Below, in pieces: positions 140 to 58,165 of a stretch of 64,000 nt of DNA (the first letter of the stretch is position 1; each line of letters begins with the position of its first letter). The notes beneath the pieces were generated by a model. It was given only the letters and a program-made list of their open reading frames with translations, searched no databases and was not told the origin of the DNA. The DNA lies in IMG/VR virus record IMGVR_UViG_3300032334_001259, positions 248,001 to 312,000 of that record; one strand, written 5' to 3'. The position numbers and the translations under genes were made by a program.

Positions 140-855
140 TACGCTTTACTCTCTTTCTTAACATGTTTATAAATCTTATTGACGCCATCCTGAAACATCA
201 TATACATAAGTGGAATATTGTCACCACTTTTGGCAAATACACGAACAGCACCATAATAATAACCACCACTACCAATATAACCATCCACAATTTTCTCACA
301 CCAACGGTCAAGTTCATATGTCATGCTTAAATCGTCACTGTTGGTTTTTACAAAATTATATAATTCAATTAGATTATCTTTCTGTGTTGATCTACCACCT
401 ACTCTCCAACCCCAATAGGTATGAAAATCAATTTGATATTTGATATCTGGATCATACTTTATTGCACTGATAAGTTTAACATCAACAGCAATATTGTCAA
501 GTTTATCCAACTCATCAACATATTGTATATTACTTGTTGTTAAACCATAAACATGTCCAAGCATTTCTGGATCATCAAGAAACGCATCAAGAAGTGACGT
601 TTCATTTGTAAAAACACGCAAACATCCTTCTTTACGCACACGTGCGGTTGGATCAAGTGCTAATACTTTTTTTCGCAAAGGAGTTGCATGAGTATAAGAA
701 AAATTCCTTATACTACCATGTGGATCGCCTAATTCCAAACGGAATCTATACTTGTTCTTATACCAAGTTTTAGCTTCGCTTGTTACACGCCAATGTGGAA
801 TTACGTTTTTAAACTTTTCCTGATATTCAATCAGCGTTTGTTCTGTCACTGCCAT
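139..855 (-). CDS. hypothetical phage protein
   Basis: 238-aa ORF overlapping the end of clpA. Confidence 0.75.
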   Translation of the reverse strand: MAVTEQTLIEYQEKFKNVIPHWRVTSEAKTWYKNKYRFRLELGDPHGSIRNFSYTHATPLRKKVLALDPTARVRKEGCLRVFTNETSLLDAFLDDPEMLGHVYGLTTSNIQYVDELDKLDNIAVDVKLISAIKYDPDIKYQIDFHTYWGWRVGGRSTQKDNLIELYNFVKTNSDDLSMTYELDRWCEKIVDGYIGSGGYYYGAVRVFAKSGDNIPLMYMMFQDGVNKIYKHVKKESKA

Positions 856-3061
856 TTTCTGCCACCAATTCTAACTTGTCATCAAGCAAGTCTACTTTAA
901 TTGTAACACTGTTCTGTGATTTGTCAAACAGTATTTTCTTTGCAAGTGGAACCTTGATGTGTTCATGAATTGTGCGGCTCATTGGTCTTGCACCAAGCAA
1001 TGGGCTATAACCCTTCTTGACAAGCCAATCATAGGCAGCGTCAGTAATATCAAGTGTGATATTTTTACCTGACATCTGTGCTTCAAGTTCAGCAATGAAC
1101 TTTTCAGCAATCTTACGGATAGTTTTGCTATCCAGTTTGTTGAATGTAACAATCGCATCTACACGATTGCGGAACTCTGGACGGAAATGTTCTTTAACAG
1201 CAGTTTCAACAACATCACTACGATCTTGGCTGCCAAAGCCAATAGCAAGACGTTCACTATCAGCTGCACCAAGATTACTGGTCATAATCAGCAATGATTG
1301 GCGACAATCAGCACGTTTACCATTTGTGCCAGTGATGAAACCCTCATCCATAACTTGCAACAATACTTGTGCAACATCAGGATGTGCCTTTTCAATTTCG
1401 TCAAATAATATAATACAATGTGGGTTCTTGGCAACTTCACTGATAAGCAATCCACCAGCAAGATTAGCATCATCATAACCAACATAACCTGGCGGAGAAC
1501 CAATTAATCGTGAAATGCTATGCTTTTCTTGATATTCACTCATATCAAAACGTAGCAGTTTCATATTAAGTTTTTCACTTAACTGTTTAGCAAGTTCTGT
1601 TTTACCAGTGCCAGTTGGACCAAGGAACAAGAAGGAACCAACGGGCTTGTTATCAGCCTTCAAGCCAGCTTGACTTACCCATACACGATCAAGAACTGCA
1701 TCAACCGCCGCATCTTGATTATAAACTTTACGTTTAATTTCTTTGTCAAGAGTTGGCATAAGTTTCTGTGTATTCTCTGCACCAAGCTGTGACTCTGGAA
1801 TACCAGTGATACGGCTCAATTCACGGCGGATTTGTGCAACATCAATAGTGCGTGATCCACGTGACTGTGTGCGGCGTAGTGCTGCGGCACTATCAATAAG
1901 GTCAATAGCCTTATCTGGTAGACGTTTATCTGCTTGATAACGATGACTTAACATCACTGCTTCTGTGACAGCAGCATCTGTAATCTTAACATTATGAAAT
2001 GTTTCATAATTGGATTTAATGCCAAGCATAATTGTCTTACAATCTTCAATGCTTGGTTCACCAACACTCACACGATTAAACCTACGCATAAGCGCACGAT
2101 CTTTTTCAAAGTGCTTGGTATATTCTTCCCATGTAGTAGAAGCAATAACCTTGAAATCACCACGAGCAAGTGCTGGCTTAATCATGTTGCTTAAATCAAC
2201 ACTGCTATTGCTACCACTGCCAGCACCATTCATTTGGTGTGCTTCATCAATAAACAGAATAACATTACCTTGTTCAGTTGCGGCGTTCATAATTTCTTGT
2301 AGACGTTCTTCAAAATCACCACGATATTTGGTACCTGCAAGCAAGCTACCAATATTCAAACTGTATACTTCATGTCCACGTAGGAACTTTGGAACATCAT
2401 CATGCACAATGTTGTAAGCAATACCCTCTGCAATAGCAGTTTTACCAACACCAGGATCACCAACCAACATAACGTTGCACTTGTTCTTACGTGCAAGAAT
2501 TTGTGTCATATCTGCAATTTCACTTGCACGACCAATGACAGGATCAATCTTGCCATCACGCACAAGTTCATTTAAATTTGTGCAATATTCATCAAGCGCA
2601 TTACCACCAACACCAACTGCTTTTTTATTTGTCTTTTTATATAATTCTAAAACTTTTTCTGGTTCAACACCATACTTGTTAAGGAAATAAGCAGCATGGC
2701 TTTGTGTTTCCTTACTGATGCTCAAATATAGGTCAGTAATATGAATTTGCTGACGACCAAGTAGAATAACTTGGGTAAAGGCACGGTTGAATACACGTTC
2801 AAGACTTTGTGTTTTCTTGGGTTCTGCACTATCACTATCTTTTACTACTGGAATATTATCAAAGATATAATTTTCCAATTCTAATACGAGATTATCAACA
2901 TCTACACCAATTTCTCGTAGGGTTTTGCTGAAACCACGTTCGTGGAGCATACTAACCAGTAGATGTTCTACGGTGTAATATTGGTGGTTGTTGTCAATAG
3001 CAAATTGCTTTGCTATTTTCACTACTTTTTCAAGGTCGCCGTTGCTGCTAAATTGTGTCAT
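827..3061 (-). CDS. clpA: ATP-dependent Clp protease ATPase subunit, ClpA-like
   Basis: Clp N-domain; two AAA+ modules (GDPGVGKT, GPTGTGKT); FIDEAH and FDEIEKAH Walker B motifs; ClpP-docking IGF loop (LAIGFG); no long ClpB middle domain. Confidence 0.93.
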   Translation of the reverse strand: MTQFSSNGDLEKVVKIAKQFAIDNNHQYYTVEHLLVSMLHERGFSKTLREIGVDVDNLVLELENYIFDNIPVVKDSDSAEPKKTQSLERVFNRAFTQVILLGRQQIHITDLYLSISKETQSHAAYFLNKYGVEPEKVLELYKKTNKKAVGVGGNALDEYCTNLNELVRDGKIDPVIGRASEIADMTQILARKNKCNVMLVGDPGVGKTAIAEGIAYNIVHDDVPKFLRGHEVYSLNIGSLLAGTKYRGDFEERLQEIMNAATEQGNVILFIDEAHQMNGAGSGSNSSVDLSNMIKPALARGDFKVIASTTWEEYTKHFEKDRALMRRFNRVSVGEPSIEDCKTIMLGIKSNYETFHNVKITDAAVTEAVMLSHRYQADKRLPDKAIDLIDSAAALRRTQSRGSRTIDVAQIRRELSRITGIPESQLGAENTQKLMPTLDKEIKRKVYNQDAAVDAVLDRVWVSQAGLKADNKPVGSFLFLGPTGTGKTELAKQLSEKLNMKLLRFDMSEYQEKHSISRLIGSPPGYVGYDDANLAGGLLISEVAKNPHCIILFDEIEKAHPDVAQVLLQVMDEGFITGTNGKRADCRQSLLIMTSNLGAADSERLAIGFGSQDRSDVVETAVKEHFRPEFRNRVDAIVTFNKLDSKTIRKIAEKFIAELEAQMSGKNITLDITDAAYDWLVKKGYSPLLGARPMSRTIHEHIKVPLAKKILFDKSQNSVTIKVDLLDDKLELVAENGSDRTNAD

Positions 3062-3067
3062 AGTCCT

Positions 3068-3095
3068 AATATAACATGTATTCAGTAGTTGTCAA
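3068..3095 (-). promoter_or_regulatory. sigma70-type promoter of clpA, leaderless geometry
   Basis: TTGACA-16-TATATT with extended TG; ATG 6 nt after the -10. Confidence 0.65.
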
Positions 3096-3964
3096 GTATT
3101 TAGTGGACGAATTTTCTGTATTTCTTTAACTAAATTAAGTTGTTCATTAGTCAAAATTGTAGGTATTTTTATATTAATTTTTGCAATATACTTGCCACGT
3201 GTTCCATTTTGTCTTGGGAAACCTTCGTCTGTGATACCAAATTGGCTATTATTTTGGGTTCCACGAGGAATATGTAATTCTATAATTTTACCACTTGGTA
3301 AACTAATAGGTAAATTACATCCTAATATGGCTTGAAATGCATCAATTGTAATATCTTCCATTACATTTTCAGCATTTCTTGTAAAACGTTCATGCCGCTG
3401 AACACGGATTTGGACATCTAAATTACCACGTGGAACGCCTGGATTGGCATCATCCCCACGTCCAACTACCTGAAATACATATCCATCTTCAACACCTGCT
3501 GGTATTTCAATTTGTATTTTATCTTTATTATTTGTGGTATTAAATTCTATAATTTTAACTTGTGGATTTAGTGTATCCAAAAAGTTAAGGTCTAATACTA
3601 CACGTAAATTACGGTTTCTTGGCTGTTGGCGAGTCTGGAAGCCAAATTGGTTAAAGAATTGGTCATGGAAATTAGCAAATGGGTCTGAACCACCACCAAA
3701 GTTAAAGTGAAACTCAAATGGATTTCCGCCACCTTGATGCTGATGAAAATTACGGAATTGTGGTTGTGGATTTTTCAAACTATAATCATAAGCGGCACGT
3801 TCTTGTGGATTGCTTAATGTATTATAAGCATCGTTGATCTGTTGAAACTTGTCTTTGCTACCACCCAAATCAGGATGATGCTGTTTGGCAAGTTTTCTAA
3901 AAGCTGATTTAATTTCTTCTGGAGTGGCAGACTGTGCCACCCCAAGTGTTTCATAATGACTCAT
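3092..3964 (-). CDS. dnaJ: DnaJ class B (CbpA-like) co-chaperone
   Basis: J-domain with HPD, G/F-rich linker, C-terminal domain, no zinc-finger repeats. Confidence 0.9.
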   Translation of the reverse strand: MSHYETLGVAQSATPEEIKSAFRKLAKQHHPDLGGSKDKFQQINDAYNTLSNPQERAAYDYSLKNPQPQFRNFHQHQGGGNPFEFHFNFGGGSDPFANFHDQFFNQFGFQTRQQPRNRNLRVVLDLNFLDTLNPQVKIIEFNTTNNKDKIQIEIPAGVEDGYVFQVVGRGDDANPGVPRGNLDVQIRVQRHERFTRNAENVMEDITIDAFQAILGCNLPISLPSGKIIELHIPRGTQNNSQFGITDEGFPRQNGTRGKYIAKINIKIPTILTNEQLNLVKEIQKIRPLNT

Positions 3965-27253: not shown

Positions 27254-27616
27254 TTATTTTAACGAATATTTTTCTAACATATACAGCATATAATGAAAGA
27301 CTTTTGCACCATATCTTATTTTAAACGTATAAGTTCCAGGTGTATCCATATATCCATAGTGATTATAAAGAATTTTGTTATCAGATGACCTATATACCCC
27401 AAATCTATCCAATAAAACTAAATGTGTATCATCACACATGATTTTTTTAATAATTACTTTACCATAATCTAATTTGACACAAATGTTTGTTATAGTTTTA
27501 GGATCATGTTCAAACACATATACTTTGACCCCATCATCTGATTCTTCAATACAGTTAGGAGTTAAAGAATATTTTGAATTATCAAATGTTTCGAGATATA
27601 ATTTTATTTTTTGCAT
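27254..27616 (-). CDS. hypothetical protein
   Basis: overlaps the end of the radical SAM gene. Confidence 0.65.
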   Translation of the reverse strand: MQKIKLYLETFDNSKYSLTPNCIEESDDGVKVYVFEHDPKTITNICVKLDYGKVIIKKIMCDDTHLVLLDRFGVYRSSDNKILYNHYGYMDTPGTYTFKIRYGAKVFHYMLYMLEKYSLK

Positions 27617-29117
27617 TGGTTTCTTTATATATTTTCATCAAGTTATCAACTTCGGCAACCCATTTATTAATTACAAAAGCATCATGTCTTTCATAATTTA
27701 AACTATCTGCAAATTCAATTAGTCTATACCAACGGTCAATTCTTACATCAAAAGTATTTTCTGGGTTAACAGTGCTTGTCCAAAATTTTTGATATAAGTG
27801 TAAATCAACATTATGTGTTAACCCATGAGATTTCATTATTTCTCGATTGGTAAAAAGAGGTGCATTTTCATTTAACATGAGTGTTGGACTTGCAACCCAT
27901 GTTATCATCTTATTTGCAGCAAGATGTGAATGTCTTTTAAACATTTCTAAAGTTTGTTGAAAATCTTCTTCGGTTTCTGTTGGATAACCAACAATCATTA
28001 ACCATATTTGTTTAATGCCAACCCTGTGCAAATTTTGAATACTATAATCAAGATCGTCATTATTGAATTTCTTTTTCATATCAAACCTTACACGTTCACT
28101 ACCGCTCTCTACACCAATGCTCCACCGTTTGCAACCTGCTCTTGCAGCCAAGTCAAAATCTTCTTCTGGCATTTGATGTTTTCCACGGAAAATAGCATAG
28201 CCTTGATAACTAATTTCATTGGGAATTTCTTTTGCTAAAATTTCATTGATGCGTCTATAATTGGTGACACTACCGTTTATTAAGTTATCTGTAAACTCTA
28301 CATTACGAATACCAGTATTTCTATAATAAGAAATTATTTCGTTTGCTACTTTTTCAGGATCTCTATATATAAATTTTGGCCAAAAACTTTCAACATCACA
28401 AAATGTGCATTTTCTTATACAACCTTTACTTCCTGTTACAACAAAATAAGGTTCTTGAACTATTCTCTCTAGGGTAGGATGGTTTTCAAGTTTTTTGTAT
28501 TTAGTTAAATCATAATCACTATATTTTGGAAGTGGAACTAAATCTAAATCTTCTTTAGTTTGTTGTGGAGATTCATAAATTCCTGTAATATTTTCTTTTA
28601 TTACTGTTATAATACTACTTTCCGCATCACCTACTACAACAGTGTCAGCAATACCATTCTCAATAAAATTGACATAGTGTTTTTTAGAATTTGTAGTTAA
28701 ACCACTTGTAACTTCTAAACCCTTACCACCAGCAATAATTTTAATATGGGGGTAATATCTTCTTATCAAATAACTTATAATAAAAGAAAAATCTAAACTT
28801 TCACTTGTAAAAATACTTAAACCAATCCATTCTGGATTATGTGTGATTACTAAATTGTTTAAAAATTTTTTAGTAAATTTTAATATATCTAAAAATAATC
28901 TACGTGGAAGTTTAAAGTCATACACATATCCAATGCAAAAAGTATTTTTTACCCCGATCCAATGGGGATTATCTATAAATTTTTCAAGAAAAAGTGTATT
29001 AAAATCAACAGCAGTTGCAGTTATGCCTGCATCATTTAAGCAAGCACTTAATAAAATCGGCGCAACTTGAGGATGTGGGTGTATATAAGGAACACTTAAT
29101 ATTACTACTTTAGACAT
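27582..29117 (-). CDS. B12-binding radical SAM enzyme
   Basis: N-terminal cobalamin-binding-type domain (IGLSIF, GG, GDAE); KGCIRKCTFC; GVESGS; VGYPTE. Confidence 0.9.
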   Translation of the reverse strand: MSKVVILSVPYIHPHPQVAPILLSACLNDAGITATAVDFNTLFLEKFIDNPHWIGVKNTFCIGYVYDFKLPRRLFLDILKFTKKFLNNLVITHNPEWIGLSIFTSESLDFSFIISYLIRRYYPHIKIIAGGKGLEVTSGLTTNSKKHYVNFIENGIADTVVVGDAESSIITVIKENITGIYESPQQTKEDLDLVPLPKYSDYDLTKYKKLENHPTLERIVQEPYFVVTGSKGCIRKCTFCDVESFWPKFIYRDPEKVANEIISYYRNTGIRNVEFTDNLINGSVTNYRRINEILAKEIPNEISYQGYAIFRGKHQMPEEDFDLAARAGCKRWSIGVESGSERVRFDMKKKFNNDDLDYSIQNLHRVGIKQIWLMIVGYPTETEEDFQQTLEMFKRHSHLAANKMITWVASPTLMLNENAPLFTNREIMKSHGLTHNVDLHLYQKFWTSTVNPENTFDVRIDRWYRLIEFADSLNYERHDAFVINKWVAEVDNLMKIYKETNAKNKIISRNI

Positions 29118-32160: not shown

Positions 32161-33432
32161 TCAGTCGCCCACTGCACCATCATAGTTCCACTTAAATGAA
32201 CCCCATAGTGAACGGGCTTCATCTACTTTGGTCTGGCTACCAAGATGCTTGCGGATCAAATCCATAACCATCTTACGAGTATTCTTACCATCAAACTTAC
32301 CAAACACAATACCAGGTGCAAACTGGTCTTGTGCCTTGATAGTAGGCATCCACTCTAACGCATAACGCTTGCGGTCAAGACCATGAGCAACAACCGTGTC
32401 AAAATAGTGATCATATGACTTCACGGTTTGGTTTACACCAATCCAAAAATCGGTTTCAAAATCTTCAACACGCTTGCGGTCATCATCCAACATAAACGCC
32501 TTTGCATCATCCATCTTTTCTTCAACAAGAAGTTCAATGATGTTCTTCTCGTGAAGCAGATGATCCTTGGTCTTATGAATACGCAAATACCACTCACCCT
32601 TGCACTTGACCATGTGACCATCGTCAAAGCGTATGATATAACCTTCAATGCCTTCTGCATCTTTGGTTTCATCCATAAGGTGTGACATAGATTGTGCAGA
32701 ACCTTGGTAAGTCTGCACCACTTCTATGTCAAACATATCACCGTATTCTTGCAACCATTGTAGGCTTGCATACACGCCGCTATCCTTACGACGAGCAGCA
32801 ATCAACACAAGACGATCTACAGGATAGTCCACAACAATACGTTGCTTACGTGAACACCATTCAAAGATAGGAGTGTAACCTGTCTTGTTTTCACACCAAC
32901 GAGCAAATTGCTCATACTGTGGATGACGAGCAACAAACTCTTCTGCTTGCATAGAGACTTCGGTCAAACCCATCTTGGTTCCCCAACGGATGCTACCATC
33001 AGGCATGTAGACAGGCGTGATCATAGAGCCGTCTAACTTCTCCAAGATAACATGTGGCTGCGTGAAGTCAATCACACCAAACTGCGTTTCATCACGTTCA
33101 CCAATGTTGAAGAACTTGTGCAGACGGCGTGACATGATAGAGCCGTCCTTGTGGAACAGCATACCACGACACTCACGACGAATAGCCGCAAGGTTGACAG
33201 ATTCAGGGCAACGCTGTGAACCACAGTGATCAATATCCTTGATCAATTGCTTGCAACCAGGACACCAGTATTCATCTTCCGTAACAGGAGGAAAGGTATC
33301 GGTCATGGATACCATGTAGTTGACTACATAGCCCCAATCACGTTCTGCAATGATAAACTCATCACGACCTTCAATCGCAGGACGAACCTGATCAAGGTGG
33401 GTGATGCGTGGGAAATCATACTTCATAGCCAT
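32161..33432 (-). CDS. RNA ligase 1 (T4 Rnl1/RnlA-like)
   Basis: RECRG, KFFN, EKLDGS adenylation motif, FEW, EGYI and KCK..WY; promoter TTGACA-16-TATTAT. Confidence 0.92.
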   Translation of the reverse strand: MAMKYDFPRITHLDQVRPAIEGRDEFIIAERDWGYVVNYMVSMTDTFPPVTEDEYWCPGCKQLIKDIDHCGSQRCPESVNLAAIRRECRGMLFHKDGSIMSRRLHKFFNIGERDETQFGVIDFTQPHVILEKLDGSMITPVYMPDGSIRWGTKMGLTEVSMQAEEFVARHPQYEQFARWCENKTGYTPIFEWCSRKQRIVVDYPVDRLVLIAARRKDSGVYASLQWLQEYGDMFDIEVVQTYQGSAQSMSHLMDETKDAEGIEGYIIRFDDGHMVKCKGEWYLRIHKTKDHLLHEKNIIELLVEEKMDDAKAFMLDDDRKRVEDFETDFWIGVNQTVKSYDHYFDTVVAHGLDRKRYALEWMPTIKAQDQFAPGIVFGKFDGKNTRKMVMDLIRKHLGSQTKVDEARSLWGSFKWNYDGAVGD

Positions 33433-33458: not shown

Positions 33459-33671
33459 TTAGCGGTTTGTCAAGAGATCAATTCGGGTCTTAAGTACTTC
33501 TAATTCAAAGAGTTTTCCAAAGGCTTTACGGGCTTCCCGTTCACATTGGTCCTCTAACCTGTCAAAATGGTCTACTAACAGGTAGGCTTGATAGGAATAA
33601 AATACTAAAATAGCACATATTCCCATGCCCAATAACCAAGCCAAAAATAGCGACAAATAATATAATATCAT
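33459..33671 (-). CDS. small membrane protein
   Basis: N-terminal TM helix; promoter TTGACA-16-TATGAT (33678-33705) ends 6 nt before the ATG. Confidence 0.65.
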   Translation of the reverse strand: MILYYLSLFLAWLLGMGICAILVFYSYQAYLLVDHFDRLEDQCEREARKAFGKLFELEVLKTRIDLLTNR

Positions 33672-35620
33672 GCTGCTATCATAGCATGATCTTGGGGTTT
33701 GTCAACCTTTAAATTTTCGGTTTTAATATGGGCAATACCAAAGTTTTCACGGCGTTTCCAGTAGATATATTCCAAATACTGTGCTTCGGTAAGATTAACA
33801 TCGCCATTATACTTGAATGTTACATGAACTGGTGTTTCAAGTTTAGTATTGTGCAGTAGATAATTGTAGAAATCGTAGTTGTATGTTCCAGTTACAGGAT
33901 AGTTTTTAAGTGTATGATAATCAATTACACTCTTGCGTTGGAAGTCAATCAATTCATCAATAAACTTCTTGTCAACTTTGTATGTCTTACGCACAAATGC
34001 TTCAACCAAATTAAGAACATGTTCGATCTTATTATTAGCAACAATACTAATAATAATCTTCCACATCAAACTCATGCGACGAATAGTAAAGTTATTAACC
34101 ATCATCTTTTCATTACCACCAGTCCAACTATCATAGAAGTCAGCGATAGATTGGAACTCATTGCGCATAAACTCATCGCCTTGAAAATATTCATACAAGT
34201 TTTCATAGAAGTCAGCATAACTTACGCCAAACTTTTTGTTCAATACACGTGCAACATAACTTGTAATACCATTGGTATGCAGACCCATAAGATAACAACT
34301 GAATATAAGTGACTTCTTAAAATCTTCTGGTGGCATATCTTTTGTTGCAACAGTGATTTCCACGCTCTCTTGCAAATCATCAAAGTTGTTTACACCATGG
34401 AAATAATCTGGTGCAAGGATTGTTTTAATTTGGAACTCATCACGTTGCGCCAAGTTAAGTTCAGCATTTTCAAGCAACATACTGATCCATACTTCAATAC
34501 CGTTGTGATTACCTGCTTCAAAGATGCGATAGAAGTTCTTGCGCCAAGTATCATATGTTTCACCTGGCAAACCAAGAATGAGTTCACTATAAACAGGAAT
34601 ATTTGCTTCTTCACAAAGTTTATAAATTTCACCTACACGGTTGATTTCAAGGTTCTTACGCTTAATATTAGCCAACACATCTTCATCAAGACTTTGGAAT
34701 GATACTGTTAAACCATAATTTGGGAAGTTACTGTTGATAAACTTGCTTACGATCTCAACAACTTCTTTCTTCTGGTTCTTGGCATAGTTAATAACATAGT
34801 TACGTGGATAACCATACTTGTAATTGGTTTCAATAAGTTTATCCGCAATCAACAAATCACGTTCTGGAAAAATACCAAAGTTAGCATCACAAATTGTAAA
34901 ATGGTCTAACTTGTTTTGTCCCATCCATTCAATTTCAGCAAATACACGTTCTAAATCAAACTGCTTAATCTTGCTTTGTGTGATACTACCCCAATCACAG
35001 AATGTGCACATATATGGGCAACCACGATTGGTTTCTAACATACCATTCCAAGTAACAAGTGGATTGTCTGCCATAATCTTTTGGAATAATCCGCTTGTAT
35101 ATGGACTTGGAATTTCATCAAGTTTATCAATACGTTTGCTTACACCAGTATCAACACGTTTACCATTATCGTTTACAAGAATACCCTTGACACTTTTTAA
35201 ATCGTCACGGTTAAGTAACATGTTTTTAAAACTGATTTCACCTTCATTCTTAATGACTACATCCATAAATGGATAACGTTCAAAGATGTCCATCTTTTCA
35301 ATCTGTGGTTCTGGACCACCAAATACAATCAATATATGCGGATATAATTTCTTAATAGTTTTAGCCAGTTTGTAATTATAATTACGATTCCAAATATATG
35401 TAGAGAAACCTACAATATCTGCATCTTTAAGTTTTTCAACAGCGACATCAATATCGTCTCGTCTCCATAACATTTCACCAAGTTCATATTGGTCAGTTAC
35501 TTCACTAAACTGACTTACATAACTCCACAGCAGTCCTACGCTGTAGGGTAGATAAAATGCGTTAAGGTGTGTTGGACCTTGTTGGAAGTTGACACTTACG
35601 AAGCTGATTTTCTTTTTCAT
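33668..35620 (-). CDS. B12-binding radical SAM enzyme
   Basis: GFSTYIWN, GGP, ETNRGCPYMCTFCDWG, DANFG and LILGLPGET motifs. Confidence 0.92.
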   Translation of the reverse strand: MKKKISFVSVNFQQGPTHLNAFYLPYSVGLLWSYVSQFSEVTDQYELGEMLWRRDDIDVAVEKLKDADIVGFSTYIWNRNYNYKLAKTIKKLYPHILIVFGGPEPQIEKMDIFERYPFMDVVIKNEGEISFKNMLLNRDDLKSVKGILVNDNGKRVDTGVSKRIDKLDEIPSPYTSGLFQKIMADNPLVTWNGMLETNRGCPYMCTFCDWGSITQSKIKQFDLERVFAEIEWMGQNKLDHFTICDANFGIFPERDLLIADKLIETNYKYGYPRNYVINYAKNQKKEVVEIVSKFINSNFPNYGLTVSFQSLDEDVLANIKRKNLEINRVGEIYKLCEEANIPVYSELILGLPGETYDTWRKNFYRIFEAGNHNGIEVWISMLLENAELNLAQRDEFQIKTILAPDYFHGVNNFDDLQESVEITVATKDMPPEDFKKSLIFSCYLMGLHTNGITSYVARVLNKKFGVSYADFYENLYEYFQGDEFMRNEFQSIADFYDSWTGGNEKMMVNNFTIRRMSLMWKIIISIVANNKIEHVLNLVEAFVRKTYKVDKKFIDELIDFQRKSVIDYHTLKNYPVTGTYNYDFYNYLLHNTKLETPVHVTFKYNGDVNLTEAQYLEYIYWKRRENFGIAHIKTENLKVDKPQDHAMIAA

Positions 35621-35630
35621 GATAAAATAT

Positions 35631-36302
35631 TTATTGTCCTGTGATTTCACATAATTGTTTTATTGTAGTTATTTTACTATCTTGATTACATAAGTCAATA
35701 TACTTTTGTGTATCACGACTCCATTCAGCACCTGTCCACCATTCAAAACCTGATAACTTTGCTTTGTAAATAGAACCTTTTTCATATCCACTACCTATAT
35801 AGAGATAATTTAATCCTAATTGTGCTGCGCAGTTTACTTCAAAGTTTAACATATCTAATCCAAACTTATTTTTTGGATGCGGTATGTAGGCATTAAATTG
35901 ACTTTCTAATCCACCCGTATATTTTGCAAACTTTGTGAAACCAACTAATTCATCATTTACATAATACTCCATCCAACGATCACGTTCATTTGTTACAAAT
36001 GGGTCATAGATTGGTGGATATTTTTTGCTTGTAATATAAGTTTGCCAGATTTGTTTGTATAATTCTATATTTGGATTATTTTCTATAAAAAATATACGGC
36101 AGTTTTGTTGTTGATAATTTAGTTTCCAATTCGCAATACAAATACGTGTGCTACGTGACTGATACCATAGGTCATTATATAGCAACCAACCATTCGCTAA
36201 TGCTTCACCTTCTTCATGTGGTTCACATTGCAGATTTACATTATATAATTGTATACTGTTGTTTTCTTGTTGACCGTAATAGTGGTCATAAGTAATCTTC
36301 AT
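35631..36302 (-). CDS. aminoacyl-tRNA-protein transferase-like (Bpt/ATE1, GNAT fold)
   Basis: AL.NGW...W.QSRSTRI N-part; LNYLYIGSGY....YK..L.GFE C-terminal motif. Confidence 0.6.
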   Translation of the reverse strand: MKITYDHYYGQQENNSIQLYNVNLQCEPHEEGEALANGWLLYNDLWYQSRSTRICIANWKLNYQQQNCRIFFIENNPNIELYKQIWQTYITSKKYPPIYDPFVTNERDRWMEYYVNDELVGFTKFAKYTGGLESQFNAYIPHPKNKFGLDMLNFEVNCAAQLGLNYLYIGSGYEKGSIYKAKLSGFEWWTGAEWSRDTQKYIDLCNQDSKITTIKQLCEITGQ

Positions 36303-36316
36303 ACAGGTAATTATAG

Positions 36317-36811
36317 ATGGTTGACATAGATATCGCAAAAAGTAAAATCAGCGATTGGATAATTAATTTTTTAGATGTTCCGCAAGAAACACTTAATAAC
36401 ATTGCTCCTTGTCCTTATGCTAAAAATGCATTATTGGGTAATAAAATAAAGTTTGTTGCTGGTGGTGAAAACATAATAGATGATATGTTATATTTTCATT
36501 ATCGTTGGGATTTTAATTATGACGGTGTAGTTATAGTATATCCAAAAACAATTGATGCTGACCGTTTTGTAAACAGTGTGGCAGAAGTCAATACTGGGTA
36601 TTATACTTTTAGTGGATTGCTTGCACTTGAAGATCATCCACAAATAGATGAAACTATTGCTGGTGTTAATTTAAATAATGGCGATTATGCATTGGTCATT
36701 ATTCAACCAGCAGTTAAGCTACAAAAAGCTATGAAAATTTTACAAACCAAAGGTTATTATAAAAACTGGACACAGCAAGATTTAGACAATGTTGTTAATT
36801 GGAGATGGTAA
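36317..36811 (+). CDS. DUF1415-like protein
   Basis: WI..F...LN...PCPYA and DHP motifs. Confidence 0.5.
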   Translation: MVDIDIAKSKISDWIINFLDVPQETLNNIAPCPYAKNALLGNKIKFVAGGENIIDDMLYFHYRWDFNYDGVVIVYPKTIDADRFVNSVAEVNTGYYTFSGLLALEDHPQIDETIAGVNLNNGDYALVIIQPAVKLQKAMKILQTKGYYKNWTQQDLDNVVNWRW

Positions 36812-37864
36812 TTGTATAGCGTTTACCAACATTGGGACAAACTTAAAACGTGTGTAGTTGGTCAAAGTTATCCACCAGAATTTTATAGTTATATTACTAA
36901 TCCCCGTGTTCGCAACGTTATGGAACGTATTGCCATTGAGACAGAAGAAGACTATCAAAAATTAATTACATTATTAAAAAGTTTTGATGTTAAAATATTA
37001 CGTCCTGAATTGAAAGATTCAATTGAATTTTATAAAATTGAAAATAAAAAATACTCACCTCCACCAATGAATCCACGTGATGATTCTGGCATGTTTGGAA
37101 ATACTTTTTACATCAACAACCATTTTGATTTTTATACTAACATTATTAAAGATATACAAAATACTAATACAGTAATACAAGGTAAAAATATTAACACAGC
37201 CTCAATAACAAGAATAGGCAAAGATTTGTATTTTGGAACACCATCTGAAAAAGATTTATACAAATTTATTGAACCTAAGTTTGCACATAAAGAAAAATTT
37301 TTAAAACAAAAAGAAAAAATTTTAAAACAACATATGGTAAAACAAACAGAGAATTTTCCATCTTATAGATGTCATGTTGTTAAAAGTGAAGGACACATTG
37401 ATGGATGTTTTTGTCCAGTTGTTCCAGGTCTTATTGTAAGTTTATATAATGTTCAAACTTACAGTAAATCATTTCCTAAATGGGAAGTTATATATTTGCC
37501 AAATCAAAGTTTTAATGTAATTGAGTCTTTTAGAAAACTAAAAAATAAAAATAATGGTAAATGGTGGATACCAGGTGAAGAATTAAATGATGATTTAACT
37601 GATTTTATTGAATCATGGTTAAATCATTGGGTAGGATATGTTGAAGAAACAGTTTTTGATGTTAATATGTTGGTAATTGATAAAAAAAATGTAGTTTGTA
37701 ACAACTACAACAAAACTGTGTTTGATGCTTTTGATAGGCATGGTATAACACCTCATGTAATCAATTTTAGACATCGTTATTTTTGGGATGGTGGTCTACA
37801 TTGTATTACAAGCGATTTAGACCGTGATGGTGTTATGGAAGATTATTTTCCAGAAAGACTTTGA
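36812..37864 (+). CDS. amidinotransferase (pentein superfamily)
   Basis: WD.LK..VVG, NPRD, GHIDG, FDVNML and GGLHCIT catalytic Cys motif; TTG start. Confidence 0.88.
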   Translation: MYSVYQHWDKLKTCVVGQSYPPEFYSYITNPRVRNVMERIAIETEEDYQKLITLLKSFDVKILRPELKDSIEFYKIENKKYSPPPMNPRDDSGMFGNTFYINNHFDFYTNIIKDIQNTNTVIQGKNINTASITRIGKDLYFGTPSEKDLYKFIEPKFAHKEKFLKQKEKILKQHMVKQTENFPSYRCHVVKSEGHIDGCFCPVVPGLIVSLYNVQTYSKSFPKWEVIYLPNQSFNVIESFRKLKNKNNGKWWIPGEELNDDLTDFIESWLNHWVGYVEETVFDVNMLVIDKKNVVCNNYNKTVFDAFDRHGITPHVINFRHRYFWDGGLHCITSDLDRDGVMEDYFPERL

Positions 37865-38322
37865 TATTCATTATATAAATCATAATAAGCATCGCTTACT
37901 TGTTGCGGTGTAATACCAGCATGACGAAATCCATTTAAGATAGACCTTACATAACTCATACTTGGTAAATCACCATCTAAACTTTCACGTGCTACAGGTG
38001 TCATATAATATACCCATGCTTCATAACGTTTTCCACCACTTATAACTGGAACAGTTTTACGACCATAAAAACGTGGGTAACCTTCAACTGCATCTAACTC
38101 ACGAATATAATCAGTTGGCAATTCCCAAAGAACACCATCTACACTGCTACCACCACGTTCATAAACATTTGCAAATCTTGCAAATTCATAAGCATAATTT
38201 TGTAGCACTGCAGGTCCAATAAATTTAGCACCAGGCATCATTTGTGGATCAGTAAGCATACCATAAGCGAAGTAATAAATTGGTTCACCACCTGCTTCTG
38301 TAATAATATCTTTTACTTGCAT
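37843..38322 (-). CDS. gamma-glutamylcyclotransferase-like protein (second copy)
   Basis: YFAYG, GVLWE, LDAVEGYP.FY and PS..Y motifs. Confidence 0.85.
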   Translation of the reverse strand: MQVKDIITEAGGEPIYYFAYGMLTDPQMMPGAKFIGPAVLQNYAYEFARFANVYERGGSSVDGVLWELPTDYIRELDAVEGYPRFYGRKTVPVISGGKRYEAWVYYMTPVARESLDGDLPSMSYVRSILNGFRHAGITPQQVSDAYYDLYNEYQSLSGK

Positions 38323-38325
38323 ATG

Positions 38326-38724
38326 TTATTTATTGCGGTCTTTCCAGACTTCATCATTGGCAATGGGTTGCAAAAAATGTATTAGTGCACCTTCCATTGC
38401 ACTTAACTCAGTTTCTTTTTGCAGTGGAATATAATATGTTTTCCAAAATTCAGTAGGATAATTAGAATTTTCCAATAAAGTTTTCCAACCTTCTGGCATG
38501 TAGATATTTTTATTACCAATAGTTTTTTGATAGTGCATATCTTGACGGGTTCTAATATTACCTTTGCCTATATAGACAATATCAGTATTATTATGAACAA
38601 TAATATAAACACCACGCATTTTTTGTCTTGGTATTTTACGCCAATCTAAAAAAGATATTTCTTTTATTTCACAATCAATATTAAAAAAATCAGAGCATTT
38701 TTTTACTGTATCTAATATTTTCAT
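38326..38724 (-). CDS. GIY-YIG nuclease-domain protein
   Basis: GVY...VYIGKG..R.R, E..LI..LQP..N. Confidence 0.75.
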   Translation of the reverse strand: MKILDTVKKCSDFFNIDCEIKEISFLDWRKIPRQKMRGVYIIVHNNTDIVYIGKGNIRTRQDMHYQKTIGNKNIYMPEGWKTLLENSNYPTEFWKTYYIPLQKETELSAMEGALIHFLQPIANDEVWKDRNK

Positions 38725-38738: not shown

Positions 38739-38815
38739 TGGCGATCTCACGTGGACTCGAACCACGACTCTGCCGCTTAGAAGGCGGCCGCTTTGTCCAG
38801 TTAAGCTATGAGACC
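38739..38815 (-). tRNA. tRNA-Arg(UCU)
   Basis: cloverleaf; anticodon arm GCCGC-CTTCTAA-GCGGC; GTTCGAG T-loop; encoded CCA. Confidence 0.95.
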
Positions 38816-39172
38816 ATCTAAATTAAATTCATCTTCCAAATATATTTTATCTACTTTTTGTATAAAGCTATTTGATAATCTTTTTGGTATAATTGTTTTA
38901 CATATTCTTATACTAACATCATGTGTTATTTTGTCAACTGCATTATTATGTCTTTGATCAATTACTAAACATAAAGTTTTACTAGCCTTATATATTTTAC
39001 TAAAAGTTGCCACACGGTTAGTAATGTATTCACTATAACCTACTTGAATTACTCCACCTTTGTAGGGTGTGTCTTGTGATACTTCAAACTCATCAATAAC
39101 TTTTAGATTTGTATCTTGACGAAGTAATTGTGAAATTTTTTCTATATCTTCAACAAGAAATAAAATTTTCAT
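38801..39172 (-). CDS. hypothetical protein (stop codon inside tRNA-Arg)
   Basis: 123-aa ORF coupled to the mtnN-like gene. Confidence 0.65.
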   Translation of the reverse strand: MKILFLVEDIEKISQLLRQDTNLKVIDEFEVSQDTPYKGGVIQVGYSEYITNRVATFSKIYKASKTLCLVIDQRHNNAVDKITHDVSIRICKTIIPKRLSNSFIQKVDKIYLEDEFNLDGLIA

Positions 39173-39702
39173 ACTAATATTTCTAAAAATTTTTCCGCAC
39201 CCTTGTGCATATTTTCTTTCCAGTGTGCACTTGCATCTTCATCTGCAAAATCAGTCATGTATTTGTAGCATTCAAATTGTTTATTAAATCTTTTACATAC
39301 TTTTGCAATAGCATATGCTTCCATATCAACAGCGTCAGTTAATAATTCAGGTTTAGATTTTACAAAGTTATCACCAGTGCTCAATGTGAACACACTATCA
39401 TTCAGAACAATAGGACCACCATCATCTTCAAATGGTGTATAACCTAACTGTGTAAGTGGTCTTGTATCCATATCACGTTGATAAACAGTTCCAATATTGA
39501 TTAACCGTCCAATAATATCTTTATTAAGTGCACCCGCTGTTCCATAGTTTATAATTTTAGAACAATTAGGATCTAATGCACAAATCTTCGTTGCGGCAAT
39601 AGTTGCATTTATTTTTCCAACACCAGTATAAACTATGCTTATACCAAGTGAATCAAACTTAATTGGAAATTCTGGTTCAAGTGCAACTAATATGTAAATC
39701 AT
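39169..39702 (-). CDS. mtnN: MTA/SAH nucleosidase-like (PNP_UDP_1 family)
   Basis: ALEPE, GVGKINA, NYGTAG, TGDNF, DMEAYA and TDFAD motifs. Confidence 0.85.
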   Translation of the reverse strand: MIYILVALEPEFPIKFDSLGISIVYTGVGKINATIAATKICALDPNCSKIINYGTAGALNKDIIGRLINIGTVYQRDMDTRPLTQLGYTPFEDDGGPIVLNDSVFTLSTGDNFVKSKPELLTDAVDMEAYAIAKVCKRFNKQFECYKYMTDFADEDASAHWKENMHKGAEKFLEILV

Positions 39703-43843: not shown

Positions 43844-43920
43844 TGGTGCCCACGGTCGGATTTGAACCGACACTGTGGCGATTTTAAGTCGCCTTTCTCT
43901 ACCTGTTGGAATACGTGGGC
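43844..43920 (-). tRNA. tRNA-Leu(UAA) with short variable loop
   Basis: GGCGA-CTTAAAA-TCGCC; 5-nt variable loop; GTCGG-TTCAAAT-CCGAC; A73; CCA. Confidence 0.92.
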
Positions 43921-47844: not shown

Positions 47845-49059
47845 ATGAATAATTGCAAACCACTTCGTAAATGTCTTTGCTGTGATAGTAATGACCTCAA
47901 ACTTACATTAGATTTAGGTTCTCAACCTCTTGCCAATAGTTTCAAGGCAACAGCAATAGAACGTGAAGAAACATATCCACTTGCTGTAAATTACTGTCCA
48001 CATTGCCATCATCTGCAATTAACCCATGCAGTTGATGCTAATATAATTTTTAAAGATTATGTATATGTAAGTGGAACATCACTTACTATGCAAGAATATT
48101 TTAAGTGGTTTGCTGCATTTGTTATGGAATATTTTCAAGATGTTCCGCCAAAGCGTGTGCTTGAAATTGGCTGTAATGATGGCACACAGTTAAACTATTT
48201 TAAGAAATATGGATTAGAAACGTGGGGCATTGATCCTGCGGAAAACATTTATCCAATCAGCAGCAAAAATCATAACATTATTTGTGACTTTTTATCTCAA
48301 CATGCTTTGGATAAACTCAAGCGTCCAGTAGATATTATATACGCACAAAATGTTTTTGCGCATCAAGACAATCCACAACAATTCCTTGAACTTTGCAAAT
48401 CTGTGATGAACCCTAACACACTGTTGTTCATACAGAATAGTCAAAGTGATATGATTCAAAATAATGAATTTGATACAATCTATCATGAACATAGAAATTT
48501 CTTTAGCATTAGTAGCCTTAATACCCTTGCTAACCATGTTGGACTACACCTTATTGATGTAGTAAAGGGTACAATTCACGGTGGTAGTAATATCTTTGTG
48601 TTCAGCATAGATGATGAATGTCCTGCACGTGTCAAGGGTTATATGGATTGGGAACGTATCCAAGGATTATATAATTACAAAACCTATCAGAATTGGGCAG
48701 ATGGTGCTAAACGTACAGTTAATGATTTAAGCATTGTGTTAGATGCACAGCGCAAAGCACACAATCGTGTGATTGTAGGTTATGGTGCGCCAGCCAAAGG
48801 TAATACGCTATTGAACTTTGGTAATATATCACTTGATTTTATTATAGATGATAATCCATTAAAGCAACACAAATATACACCTGGTATGAGTATTCCTGTT
48901 GTTCCTATTGAACACTTACAGAAGTATGTTGGTGTAGACATTTGTTTTGTGCCGCTTGCATGGAACTTTTTTGATGAAATTGTAGATCGTCTTAAAAAGG
49001 TTCGTAATAATAGTGGTGATGTATTTGTAAGATACTTTCCAAGTATCCAGATACAATAA
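47845..49059 (+). CDS. NDP-sugar C-methyltransferase-like
   Basis: Zn-binding C..C/C..C, LGSQPLAN, EIGCNDG, NVFAH, FDTIYHEH, HGGS and YGAPAKG.TLL motifs. Confidence 0.9.
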   Translation: MNNCKPLRKCLCCDSNDLKLTLDLGSQPLANSFKATAIEREETYPLAVNYCPHCHHLQLTHAVDANIIFKDYVYVSGTSLTMQEYFKWFAAFVMEYFQDVPPKRVLEIGCNDGTQLNYFKKYGLETWGIDPAENIYPISSKNHNIICDFLSQHALDKLKRPVDIIYAQNVFAHQDNPQQFLELCKSVMNPNTLLFIQNSQSDMIQNNEFDTIYHEHRNFFSISSLNTLANHVGLHLIDVVKGTIHGGSNIFVFSIDDECPARVKGYMDWERIQGLYNYKTYQNWADGAKRTVNDLSIVLDAQRKAHNRVIVGYGAPAKGNTLLNFGNISLDFIIDDNPLKQHKYTPGMSIPVVPIEHLQKYVGVDICFVPLAWNFFDEIVDRLKKVRNNSGDVFVRYFPSIQIQ

Positions 49060-58110: not shown

Positions 58111-58127
58111 GGTAATATTTACCCAAG

Positions 58128-58156
58128 AAAAAACCCCGTAAATTTCTTTACGGGGT
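58128..58156 (-). terminator. intrinsic terminator after the GHKL gene
   Basis: stem ACCCCGTAAA/TTTACGGGGT followed by a U-tract. Confidence 0.8.
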
Positions 58157-58165
58157 CTTATTAAA

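What the first reader, a model, noticed from the sequence alone, without database searches (positions are those of the whole stretch)
35631..36302. Bpt/ATE1-like transferase plus ClpA: possible phage N-degron pathway
Seen: an ORF with the C-terminal YLYIG.GY....YK...FE pattern typical of aminoacyl-tRNA-protein transferases, a full ClpA with IGF loop (827..3061), and phage tRNA-Leu and tRNA-Arg, the usual donor types. Known: Bpt and ATE1 add Leu or Arg to N-terminal Asp/Glu, and bacterial N-degrons are delivered by ClpS to ClpAP. Inference: the phage may tag host proteins for destruction. An alternative is tRNA-dependent aminoacylation within the neighbouring radical SAM/amidinotransferase pathway.
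Basis: partly seen in the sequence, partly recalled or inferred. Interest (0 to 1): 0.65.

Follow-up and report, generated by a model that had tools for sequence, protein, structure and literature searches.

The report
Phage ATE/Bpt-like aminoacyl-tRNA transferase cassette
A jumbo phage carries a real but unusual relative of the enzymes that add an amino acid from tRNA to protein ends, and its conserved neighbours point to arginine/guanidino chemistry rather than to the proposed protein-destruction pathway.

Summary
The ORF is real: 223 aa, window 35631-36302, minus strand. It has an ATE1/Bpt-type fold (pLDDT 94; ATE1 Z 14.1 over about 205 residues; 95.6% profile match to a bacterial Bpt). The catalytic Tyr-Lys is invariant. 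The Cys metal site and the GFRRSG motif of ATE1/Bpt are both missing. The family is essentially phage-only: at least 335 IMG/VR contigs, no GenBank phage, and four mis-binned MAG contigs.

ClpA (with IGF loop), tRNA-Arg and tRNA-Leu are present as reported. I also found a phage ClpS, outside the window. It lies 45 kb from the transferase. ClpS occurs in 5 of 18 long transferase-bearing contigs, all from jumbo-phage fragments, and none of 20 other ClpS-bearing contigs has the transferase.

What stays next to the gene:
- a DUF1415-like protein with an invariant Cys, whose only fold match is the haem-thiolate arginine N-hydroxylase AglA (32 of 80 loci, three arrangements);
- or an unrelated His/Glu-rich protein (44 of 80 loci);
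- often an arginine-type amidinotransferase.

The radical SAM gene is a lineage-specific insertion.

Best reading: a tRNA-dependent, probably basic-residue, transferase working in a guanidino-chemistry cassette. The acceptor is unresolved. The N-degron reading is possible but has no direct support.

The parts
35631..36302 (-). ATE1/Bpt-like aminoacyl-tRNA transferase, 223 aa (P0001). It keeps the two-domain ATE architecture and has no Cys metal site.
   Evidence: Y179-K180, E133, E155, K124, R50 and Y47 are invariant in 51/51 family members.
36317..36811 (+). p164, a DUF1415/DUF6875-like protein transcribed divergently, with only 14 bp between the two start codons. It is a candidate thiolate-haem enzyme and a conserved partner of the transferase.
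   Evidence: Adjacent in 32/80 loci in three arrangements. AF2 pLDDT 92.7. The only clear PDB fold match is AglA, Z 7.8 over 151/164 residues against 4.6 for the next hit. C32 in PCP[FY]A is invariant. Weak DUF6875/DUF1415 hits.
36812..37864 (+). Amidinotransferase (guanidino-group-modifying enzyme superfamily), 350 aa.
   Evidence: The family profile matches L-arginine:glycine amidinotransferase at E 4.5e-27, and also SxtG, HsvA and StrB1. R89-D90, H195-D197 and C331 (GGxHCxT) are invariant. It lies within 6 kb of the transferase in 14/80 loci plus 2 MAG contigs, and abuts it in L084 and L146.
37843..38322 (-). Gamma-glutamyl cyclotransferase-like (GGACT/AIG2) protein. In the closest relatives it sits directly downstream of the transferase.
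   Evidence: Pfam GGACT E 3.1e-14; phrog_2520; synteny in L008-L012.
33668..35650 (-). B12-binding radical SAM enzyme (KedN5-like), which overlaps or abuts the transferase stop codon. It is a lineage-specific insertion, not a conserved partner.
   Evidence: Pfam and NCBIfam hits. Among 80 loci it is found next to the transferase only in L005, which is the same phage.
38739..38815 (-). tRNA-Arg(UCU), a possible donor tRNA. The link to the transferase is circumstantial.
43844..43920 (-). tRNA-Leu(UAA), a possible donor tRNA. The link to the transferase is circumstantial.
827..3061 (-). ClpA-type unfoldase, 744 aa, with N-domain and IGF loop.
3092..3964 (-). DnaJ-like co-chaperone next to ClpA.
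32161..33432 (-). T4 Rnl1-type RNA ligase. It is the downstream neighbour in close relatives (transferase, GGACT, Rnl1).

Best explanation
P0001 is an active aminoacyl-tRNA-dependent transferase of the ATE1/Bpt architecture. It belongs to a phage-only clade that has lost the Cys metal site and the Arg-containing motif used for acidic N-termini.

It works as part of a small conserved phage cassette, not as a feeder for ClpS. Its fixed partners are a DUF1415/AglA-like protein (a candidate thiolate-haem oxygenase) and, often, an arginine-dependent amidinotransferase. In a sister clade an unrelated His/Glu-rich, probably metal-binding, protein takes the partner's place.

Proposed mechanism: the enzyme takes an aminoacyl-tRNA and forms an amide bond to a free amino group of an acceptor. 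The aminoacyl group is probably basic (Arg or similar), because an invariant Glu sits where ATE1 has its arginine-binding Glu and Bpt has Gln. The partner enzymes make or edit a guanidino group on the same product. The acceptor could be a small amine or peptide, or a protein N-terminus, and this is unresolved.

Shown here: the fold, the invariant catalytic Tyr-Lys, the loss of the two ATE/Bpt motifs, the phage-only distribution, the conserved synteny, and the identity of the amidinotransferase.

Inferred: the donor amino acid, the haem chemistry of p164, and the acceptor.
For: - Fold and homology.
- Y179-K180 align with klAte1 Tyr303-Lys304 and are present in 51/51 members (PMC9351520).
- E155 (51/51) aligns with ATE1 Glu/Asp277 and Bpt Gln. 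S134 aligns with ATE1 Ser255 and Bpt Ala (PMC9351520).
- Partner synteny: p164 is adjacent in 32/80 loci in three different orientations. The c2 partner is translationally coupled in 44/80 loci. The two are mutually exclusive and together cover 76/80 loci.
- p164 adjacency spans the deepest split of the transferase tree.
- The amidinotransferase identity is firm. It abuts the transferase in L084 and L146.
- p164's only clear structural relative is AglA, a haem-thiolate enzyme that hydroxylates the guanidine of an Arg amide (PMC12866846).
- The argolaphos gene cluster pairs that hydroxylase family with GNAT candidate aminoacyl-tRNA ligases (PMC8976061).
Against: - No biochemical data exist for any member of the family.
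- The p164-AglA match is modest (Z 7.8, 7% identity). There is no Pfam YqcI/YcgG hit, and I could not verify that Cys32 superimposes on the AglA haem ligand Cys44.
- Relatives of p164 and of the amidinotransferase also occur in phages that lack the transferase, so the cassette is not obligatory.
- The amidinotransferase is seen in only 14/80 loci, many of which are truncated.
- The donor-pocket inference rests on low-identity profile alignments, and two of the four pocket positions look like Bpt rather than ATE1.
- Every known enzyme with the ATE-type two-domain architecture acts on protein or peptide N-termini. This keeps protein tagging, and therefore a degron role, open.
Confidence: 0.45

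Rival explanations
1. The transferase adds a destabilising residue to N-termini of host (or phage) proteins. The phage ClpS reads that residue and hands the protein to the phage ClpA plus the host ClpP for degradation.
For: - ATE1 and Bpt are the closest relatives over both domains.
- The same genome encodes ClpS (E 1.4e-24) and a complete ClpA with N-domain and IGF loop.
- ClpS is also present in 4 further transferase-bearing contigs whose transferases are only 35-39% identical.
- The phage ClpS keeps the Asn and His that contact the alpha-amino group (PMC12493166).
Against: - There is no linkage: ClpS lies 45 kb and ClpA 33 kb from the gene.
- All ClpS-positive contigs are fragments of jumbo phages of roughly 350 kb. 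ClpS, ClpA and DnaJ are already known as general features of such phages (PMC7824862, PMC6102473).
- The more complete T4-sized contigs carrying the transferase lack ClpS.
- 0/20 other ClpS-bearing contigs carry the transferase.
- The phage has no ClpP and no Aat.
- The GFRRSG motif, which I take to hold the Arg essential for recognising acidic N-termini, is replaced by GWL[IL] (PMC9351520).
- An Arg-like donor pocket would make N-terminal Arg, which bacterial ClpS does not read without Aat.
- This reading does not explain the conserved partner genes.
Confidence: 0.2
2. A purely small-molecule pathway, like the argolaphos or streptothricin pathways. The cassette builds a guanidino-containing aminoacyl metabolite, such as a signal, antimetabolite or nucleotide/polyamine derivative, and no protein is modified.
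For: - Characterised amidinotransferases and YqcI/YcgG-type hydroxylases act on free amino acids or small amides (PMC12866846).
- Aminoacyl-tRNA-dependent amide synthases of this fold class appear among the fold matches (Sba18 and Sbb17, Z about 11).
- A GGACT-like enzyme and radical SAM enzymes recur nearby.
- p164 relatives occur alone in small phages, which fits a freely available substrate.
Against: - The best structural match covers both ATE domains. The small-molecule enzymes match only about 145 residues of the GNAT core.
- No transporter, carrier protein or further tailoring genes are conserved with the cassette.
Confidence: 0.25
3. The protein does not transfer anything productively. 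Instead it binds or discharges a specific aminoacyl-tRNA, for example to tune translation or to counter a tRNA-targeting host defence, in keeping with the neighbouring Rnl1 RNA ligase and tRNA genes.
For: Rnl1 lies just downstream in the closest relatives, and five tRNA genes lie within 9 kb.
Against: - The catalytic Tyr-Lys and many residues of the acceptor-side domain are invariant.
- Rnl1 adjacency is limited to 8 closely related loci.
Confidence: 0.05

Closest known systems
Eukaryotic ATE1 arginyl-tRNA-protein transferase (PDB 8tzv, 7wg1, 7tif, 8e3s)
   Same: - Two-domain architecture, N-terminal substrate domain plus GNAT: VIA Z 12.6-14.1 over 204-213 of 223 residues.
- Catalytic Tyr-Lys.
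- Acidic residue at the Glu277 position and Ser at the Ser255 position of the arginine pocket.
   Different: - Less than half the size, with no variable C-terminal domain.
- No CxxC...CC zinc/Fe-S site.
- GWL[IL] in place of the RR-containing motif.
- 11-14% identity.
- Found only in phages, with conserved partner genes.
Bacterial Bpt leucyl-tRNA-protein transferase (example: L141:2599-3411, in an aat-bpt operon)
   Same: - Similar length.
- ATE_C homology at 95.6% hhalign probability.
- Hydrophobic residues at two of the four donor-pocket positions.
   Different: - Bpt has Gln where the phage family has an invariant Glu.
- The Bpt Cys residues are replaced by Ser49 and Thr52, and an 8-residue Cys-containing segment is deleted.
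- GFRRSG is lost.
- Bpt sits next to aat in bacteria, while this gene sits next to p164 and an amidinotransferase.
Argolaphos-type clusters: the YqcI/YcgG haem N-hydroxylase AglA together with GNAT candidate aminoacyl-tRNA amide ligases (PMC12866846, PMC8976061)
   Same: A tRNA-dependent GNAT transferase is co-located with an AglA-fold protein carrying a conserved Cys, and the shared chemistry centres on arginine and its guanidino group.
   Different: - p164 is 164 aa against about 243-274 aa.
- p164 has no Pfam YqcI/YcgG hit, and haem binding is untested.
- The phage transferase is ATE-type, not FemAB-type.
- There are no phosphonate genes.
ClpS/ClpA sets of jumbo phages (Rak2-like and Atu_ph07-like; PMC7824862, PMC6102473)
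   Same: This phage has the ClpA-DnaJ pair, an IbpA-like Hsp20 and ClpS.
   Different: Those descriptions mention no aminoacyl-tRNA-protein transferase ('arginyl' occurs 0 times in PMC7824862). The GenBank phage collection, which holds such phages, has no relative of P0001.

Membership tests
ATE1/Bpt aminoacyl-tRNA-protein transferases (Pfam ATE_N + ATE_C) | ATE_C GNAT domain detectable by profile | tested here: met
   P0001 alone falls below the Pfam cut-off (17.2 vs 25 bits). However, 31/51 family members hit ATE_C, best E 9.8e-9. hhalign to a true Bpt gives 95.6% probability, E 1.1e-8. The PDB profile hit to ATE1 has E 0.015.
ATE1/Bpt aminoacyl-tRNA-protein transferases (Pfam ATE_N + ATE_C) | Catalytic Lys preceded by an aromatic residue (klAte1 Tyr303-Lys304; FemX Lys305) | tested here: met
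   Y179-K180 are present in 51/51 members and align to the ATE1 NYK motif (PMC9351520).
ATE1/Bpt aminoacyl-tRNA-protein transferases (Pfam ATE_N + ATE_C) | N-terminal substrate-binding (ATE_N) domain | tested here: inconclusive
   The structural alignment to ATE1 starts at residue 1 and covers 204-213 residues. There is no Pfam ATE_N hit, and the sequence alignment of residues 1-46 to Bpt has low confidence.
ATE1/Bpt aminoacyl-tRNA-protein transferases (Pfam ATE_N + ATE_C) | Cys4 zinc/Fe-S site (CxxC...CC) | tested here: not met
   Bpt RQCLSCRV aligns with phage YQSRSTRI. The Cys-containing YRPECHLC segment is deleted. Position 49 is Ser in 38/51 members and position 52 is Thr or Val in 50/51 (PMC9351520, PMC10115844).
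ATE1/Bpt aminoacyl-tRNA-protein transferases (Pfam ATE_N + ATE_C) | Positively charged pocket for N-terminal Asp/Glu (klAte1 Arg80, which I assume lies in the GFRRSG motif) | tested here: not met
   Bpt GFRRSG aligns with phage GWL[IL]xx: position 40 is Leu in 42/51 members, and position 41 is Ile, Leu or Ala. Placing Arg80 in that motif is my own assumption. An invariant Arg50 specific to the phage family might substitute for it.
ATE1/Bpt aminoacyl-tRNA-protein transferases (Pfam ATE_N + ATE_C) | Donor pocket: Arg type (Ser, Ser, Glu, Tyr) or Leu type (Ala, Ala, Gln, Leu) | tested here: inconclusive
   The phage family has Ser134, Ile/Met151, Glu155 and Leu167. Two positions resemble ATE1, including the only charged one, and two resemble Bpt (PMC9351520).
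ATE1/Bpt aminoacyl-tRNA-protein transferases (Pfam ATE_N + ATE_C) | Transfer of an amino acid from aminoacyl-tRNA to a protein N-terminus | not testable with these tools
   This needs an in vitro assay.
Bacterial Leu/N-degron pathway (transferase, ClpS, ClpAP) | ClpS N-recognin available | tested here: met
   A 108-aa ClpS lies at G000:C1:329134-329367 (E 1.4e-24). Its pocket is a variant: the gatekeeper Met is Val, and one Asp that contacts the alpha-amino group is Asn (PMC12493166).
Bacterial Leu/N-degron pathway (transferase, ClpS, ClpAP) | ClpA with an N-domain for ClpS docking and an IGF loop for ClpP docking | tested here: met
Bacterial Leu/N-degron pathway (transferase, ClpS, ClpAP) | ClpP peptidase encoded by the phage | tested here: not met
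   No CLP_protease match in the 338-kb genome, which is estimated 100% complete. The host ClpP would be required.
Bacterial Leu/N-degron pathway (transferase, ClpS, ClpAP) | Transferase inherited or linked together with ClpS | tested here: not met
   The two genes are 45 kb apart. ClpS occurs in 5/18 transferase contigs, all jumbo fragments. The transferase occurs in 0/20 other ClpS contigs. All of these records are fragments, so this is not a strict absence.
Aminoacyl-tRNA ligase plus YqcI/YcgG hydroxylase cassettes (argolaphos type) | Partner has the AglA sandwich fold with a haem-ligating Cys | tested here: inconclusive
   VIA Z 7.8 over 151/164 residues, with the next hit at 4.6. Foldseek probability 0.96, TM 0.53. 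Cys32 is invariant. There is no residue-level superposition, no Pfam PF08892 hit, and no profile hit to the AglA sequence.
Amidinotransferases (guanidino-group-modifying enzyme superfamily) | Profile homology and the Asp/His/Cys catalytic residues (applies to the neighbour p350) | tested here: met
   E 4.5e-27 to AGAT. The GGxHCxT Cys331, His195 and Asp90 are invariant.

The most novel reading that the evidence does not exclude
Phages run their own N-terminal tagging system. The Cys-less ATE-like enzyme puts a basic residue from tRNA onto protein N-termini. The partner oxygenase-like protein and the amidinotransferase either edit that residue's guanidino group or prepare the acceptor, much as Cys-oxidising enzymes act upstream of ATE1. 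The resulting non-standard N-terminal mark redirects protein fate during infection. In jumbo phages it might be read by their variant ClpS (gatekeeper Met replaced by Val).
Probability: 0.15. Interest if true: 0.85.

Novelty: new variant of a known kind. Interest (0 to 1): 0.62.

Why it matters
ATE1 and Bpt are the only known enzymes of this architecture, and both feed N-degron pathways. A large clade that lacks their metal site and acidic-residue motif, occurs only in phages, and travels with a candidate haem oxygenase and an amidinotransferase would widen what this enzyme class is known to do.

It would also give a concrete, testable case of phages using charged tRNA outside translation. I found no paper that describes it.

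If the product turns out to be a protein tag, it becomes a new host-takeover mechanism. If it is a metabolite, it is a rare example of phage-encoded secondary-metabolite-like chemistry spread through marine and freshwater T4-like and jumbo phages.

Tried and rejected
- **Megablast of the region against GenBank phages:** no match.
- **tblastn of P0001 and P0064 against GenBank phages:** no match.
- **tblastn of P0031 against GenBank phages:** found only a bacterial aat-bpt locus mislabelled as an Acinetobacter phage.
- **PHROGs:** no family for P0001, P0031 or P0064.
- **Complex prediction, transferase with p164:** no verdict, score 0.08 against a mark of 0.32. This is not evidence either way.
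- **PDB sequence-profile search with p164:** only weak, implausible hits such as mitofusin.
- **The c2 partner family:** no Pfam, PHROG or PDB identity for the short form. hhalign shows no relation to p164.
- **Reverse co-occurrence (transferase in ClpS-bearing contigs):** 0/20.
- **BFVD fold search:** only 140-aa GNAT-only viral proteins, no full-length relative.
- **treekit:** one call returned nothing. I rebuilt the tree with MAFFT and FastTree, rooted at the midpoint and without support tests.
- **Radical SAM as pathway partner:** rejected because it is adjacent only in this phage.
- **The large representative-protein search:** not run. The word search and the genome scan had already answered the question of distribution.

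Full report
**Observation**

The flagged ORF runs on the minus strand from ATG 36302 to the stop at 35631-35633 and encodes 223 aa (P0001). Taken alone, the protein gives only a weak Pfam ATE_C hit (E 0.0079, 17.2 bits against a 25-bit cut-off) and a weak NCBIfam arginyltransferase hit.

The family settles the question:
- A word-based search found 78 relatives, all from metagenome sources and none from NCBI or UniRef.
- In a 51-sequence alignment (A1), 31 members hit ATE_C, best E 9.8e-9.
- The family profile matches ATE1 chains in the PDB (E 0.015).
- It matches a bona fide bacterial Bpt at 95.6% probability, E 1.1e-8. That Bpt comes from an aat-bpt operon in a record mislabelled as a phage.
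- The AlphaFold model is very confident (pLDDT 94.4, pTM 0.90).
- Its best structural matches are human, K. lactis and yeast ATE1: Foldseek E 4.5e-6 and VIA Z 12.6-14.1 over 204-213 of 223 residues.
- Other aminoacyl-tRNA transferases (FemX, MprF, Sba18/Sbb17) follow at Z about 11-12, over only about 145 residues.

So the fold claim is confirmed, including the N-terminal domain.

The window is positions 248001-312000 of a 338,435-bp virus record with direct terminal repeats, estimated 100% complete.
- ClpA (827-3061, minus strand) has a Clp_N domain, two AAA modules, KYRG and GYVG pore loops, and an IGF loop at aa 607-609. A DnaJ gene sits beside it.
- tRNA-Arg(UCU) and tRNA-Leu(UAA) are present, along with three other tRNAs.
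- The genome also encodes a 108-aa ClpS at 329134-329367, outside the window, next to an IbpA-like Hsp20.
- There is no ClpP and no Aat.

**How the protein differs from ATE1 and Bpt**

Conserved:
- The catalytic Tyr-Lys (klAte1 Tyr303-Lys304; PMC9351520) corresponds to Y179-K180, which are invariant in 51/51 members.

Lost:
- Bpt RQCLSCRV aligns with phage YQSRSTRI, so the Cys ligands become Ser49 and Thr52. The preceding Cys-containing segment is deleted. The zinc/Fe-S site of ATE1 and Bpt (PMC9351520, PMC10115844) is therefore absent.
- Bpt GFRRSG aligns with GWL[IL]xx. I assume this motif holds the Arg80 that klAte1 needs to recognise N-terminal Asp/Glu. On that assumption the acidic-residue pocket is lost, although a family-specific invariant Arg50 lies nearby.

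Donor pocket:
- ATE1 has Ser255, Ser273, Glu277 and Tyr289. Bpt has Ala, Ala, Gln and Leu (PMC9351520).
- The phage family has Ser134 (47/51), Ile/Met151, Glu155 (51/51) and Leu167, plus an extra invariant Glu133.
- The one charged position resembles ATE1. I read this as a hint of a basic donor such as Arg. It is an inference from low-identity alignments.

**Distribution**

- At least 335 IMG/VR contigs encode relatives.
- tblastn with three family members (P0001, P0031, P0064) found no relative in the GenBank phage collection.
- Among 185,579 species genomes only four short MAG contigs match. Three of them carry T4-like phage genes or the same cassette genes, so they are mis-binned phage pieces. 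The fourth is a 2-kb fragment holding only the end of the gene.
- BFVD holds no full-length relative.
- The family is therefore essentially phage-only and, as far as my literature searches show, undescribed.

**Neighbourhood**

I called ORFs in 80 related loci and clustered them.
- The B12-radical SAM gene that abuts the transferase here is adjacent only in L005, which is the same phage. In the closest relatives the order is amidinotransferase, p164, transferase, GGACT, Rnl1. The radical SAM gene is therefore a recent insertion.
- p164 (window 36317-36811) is adjacent in 32/80 loci, in three arrangements: divergent upstream, convergent downstream, and same-strand downstream.
- An unrelated family, c2, starts at or overlaps the transferase stop codon in 44/80 loci. 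It comes in forms of about 160 aa and about 400 aa and has invariant His, Glu and Asp residues.
- p164 and c2 are mutually exclusive and together cover 76/80 loci.
- On a midpoint-rooted transferase tree, p164 partners occupy two clades that bracket the c2 clade. The pairing is therefore old.

**What the partners are**

p164:
- Confidently modelled (pLDDT 92.7).
- Belongs to the DUF1415/DUF6875 neighbourhood.
- Its only clear PDB fold match is AglA: Z 7.8 over 151/164 residues against 4.6 for the next hit, and Foldseek probability 0.96.
- AglA is a YqcI/YcgG haem enzyme whose iron is ligated by Cys44. It N-hydroxylates the guanidine of an arginine amide (PMC12866846).
- p164 has an invariant Cys32 in a PCP[FY]A motif. 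I could not check the residue-level superposition.

p350 (window 36812-37864):
- Firmly an amidinotransferase: profile E 4.5e-27 to L-arginine:glycine amidinotransferase, with further matches to SxtG, HsvA and StrB1, and invariant Asp, His and Cys.
- Lies within 6 kb of the transferase in 14/80 loci and abuts it in L084 and L146.

Together, an arginine-like donor pocket, a fold relative of an arginine hydroxylase and an arginine-dependent amidinotransferase all point to guanidino chemistry. The argolaphos cluster is a precedent: it pairs the AglA family with GNAT candidate aminoacyl-tRNA ligases (PMC8976061).

Two caveats apply. Relatives of p164 and p350 also occur without the transferase, in S-PM2, S-RIM32, HMO-2011, CRP-345 and S-SCSM2R. 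And the p164 match to AglA is modest.

**Testing the N-degron idea**

- ClpS is present in 5 of 18 long transferase-bearing records. One of the five is the same phage. The other four are 20-57% fragments of genomes of roughly 350 kb.
- The more complete T4-sized records (85%, 61% and 58% complete) lack ClpS.
- None of 20 other ClpS-bearing viral records has the transferase. One of these holds about 150 kb to one side of ClpS, which would cover the 45-kb spacing seen here only if the transferase lay on that side.
- ClpS, ClpA, DnaJ and Hsp20 are known general features of jumbo phages (PMC7824862, PMC6102473). The co-occurrence therefore follows genome size, not the transferase.
- The phage ClpS keeps the Asn and His that contact the alpha-amino group. 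It has Val for the gatekeeper Met and Asn for one Asp (residue roles from PMC12493166). It is probably a working N-recognin, possibly with altered specificity.
- If the transferase adds Arg, a bacterial ClpS would not read the product without Aat, which the phage lacks.

**Verdict**

The fold interpretation is right. The N-degron pathway remains possible but has no specific support (about 0.2).

The better-supported reading (about 0.45) is a tRNA-dependent transferase at the core of a conserved phage cassette built around guanidino chemistry. Whether the acceptor is a small amine or peptide, or a protein N-terminus, is unresolved. The ATE-type architecture favours a peptide or protein acceptor, while the partner enzyme families favour a small molecule.

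**Limits**

- There are no biochemical or expression data.
- The complex prediction gave no verdict.
- The c2 partner was not folded.
- All co-occurrence counts come from fragmentary contigs.

Noticed in passing
Outside the window: G000:C1:329134-329367 (L001:1480-1806, minus strand), with neighbour L001:1861-2295: The phage encodes a 108-aa ClpS directly next to an IbpA-like small heat-shock protein. With ClpA and DnaJ, this gives the phage a four-part proteostasis set.
   Followed up: yes
L001:1480-1806 and ClpS loci L085-L140: A clade of phage ClpS proteins, including this one, reads NDNVTTV where other phage ClpS proteins read NDDxTPM. The gatekeeper Met is Val and one Asp that contacts the alpha-amino group is Asn. 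This may change N-degron specificity.
   Followed up: partly
Loci L014-L073, e.g. L014:4034-4564 and L015:6662-7870: The c2 family is always translationally coupled to the transferase in one T4-like clade. It has invariant D..H, HExxEK and AHHxAxxxE residues and no known family. The long form carries a phrog_36119 C-terminal domain with a faint nucleotidyltransferase hit. Its function is unexplained.
   Followed up: partly
window 27582-29117 (-): A second B12-binding radical SAM protein (511 aa) lies 6 kb from the first.
   Followed up: no
window 56065-58176 (-) and 58166-60043 (-): A CHASE2-sensor adenylate/guanylate cyclase (703 aa) overlaps a 625-aa GHKL-ATPase (HATPase_c_3) protein. This is an unusual signalling pair for a phage.
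   Followed up: no
window 12220-16059 (-): A 1279-aa protein has YHYH and He_PIG Ig-like domains and is followed by a 737-aa protein with no Pfam hit. These are probably fibre or adhesin proteins.
   Followed up: no
window 38326-38724 (-): A weak GIY-YIG match (E 0.004, below the Pfam cut-off) in a 132-aa ORF between GGACT and tRNA-Arg. It is present only in this phage lineage and may be a homing endonuclease. A large GIY-YIG-like cluster (c1) recurs near the cassette in 46 of 80 loci.
   Followed up: partly
window 47845-49059 (+) and 60323-61324 (-): A sugar C-methyltransferase (Methyltransf_13/14 domains) and a GT4 glycosyltransferase suggest a sugar-modification gene set.
   Followed up: no
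window 39169-39702 (-): A short (177 aa) PNP_UDP_1 nucleosidase/phosphorylase-like protein lies near the radical SAM genes. It may be an MTA/SAH nucleosidase-type helper.
   Followed up: no
L141 (CAKLQH020000030.1, 'Acinetobacter phage MD-2021a'): This GenBank 'phage' record carries ftsK, trxB, aat, bpt, rimI and tufA. It looks like bacterial chromosome, not phage.
   Followed up: yes
L144, L145, L146 (MAG contigs assigned to Betaproteobacteria, Neomarinimicrobiota and Legionella): These short MAG contigs carry T4-like portal and baseplate genes or the same cassette genes. They are probably phage DNA binned into bacterial genomes.
   Followed up: yes
L006:3163-4395 and L006:4355-5542: Two tandem amidinotransferase paralogues lie next to p164 and the transferase in one relative.
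   Followed up: no
L084:7206-8396 and L067:1843-2859: An unrelated, weakly matching radical SAM-like family (c73) lies near the cassette in distant T4-like relatives. Radical SAM genes therefore recur nearby, but from different families.
   Followed up: partly
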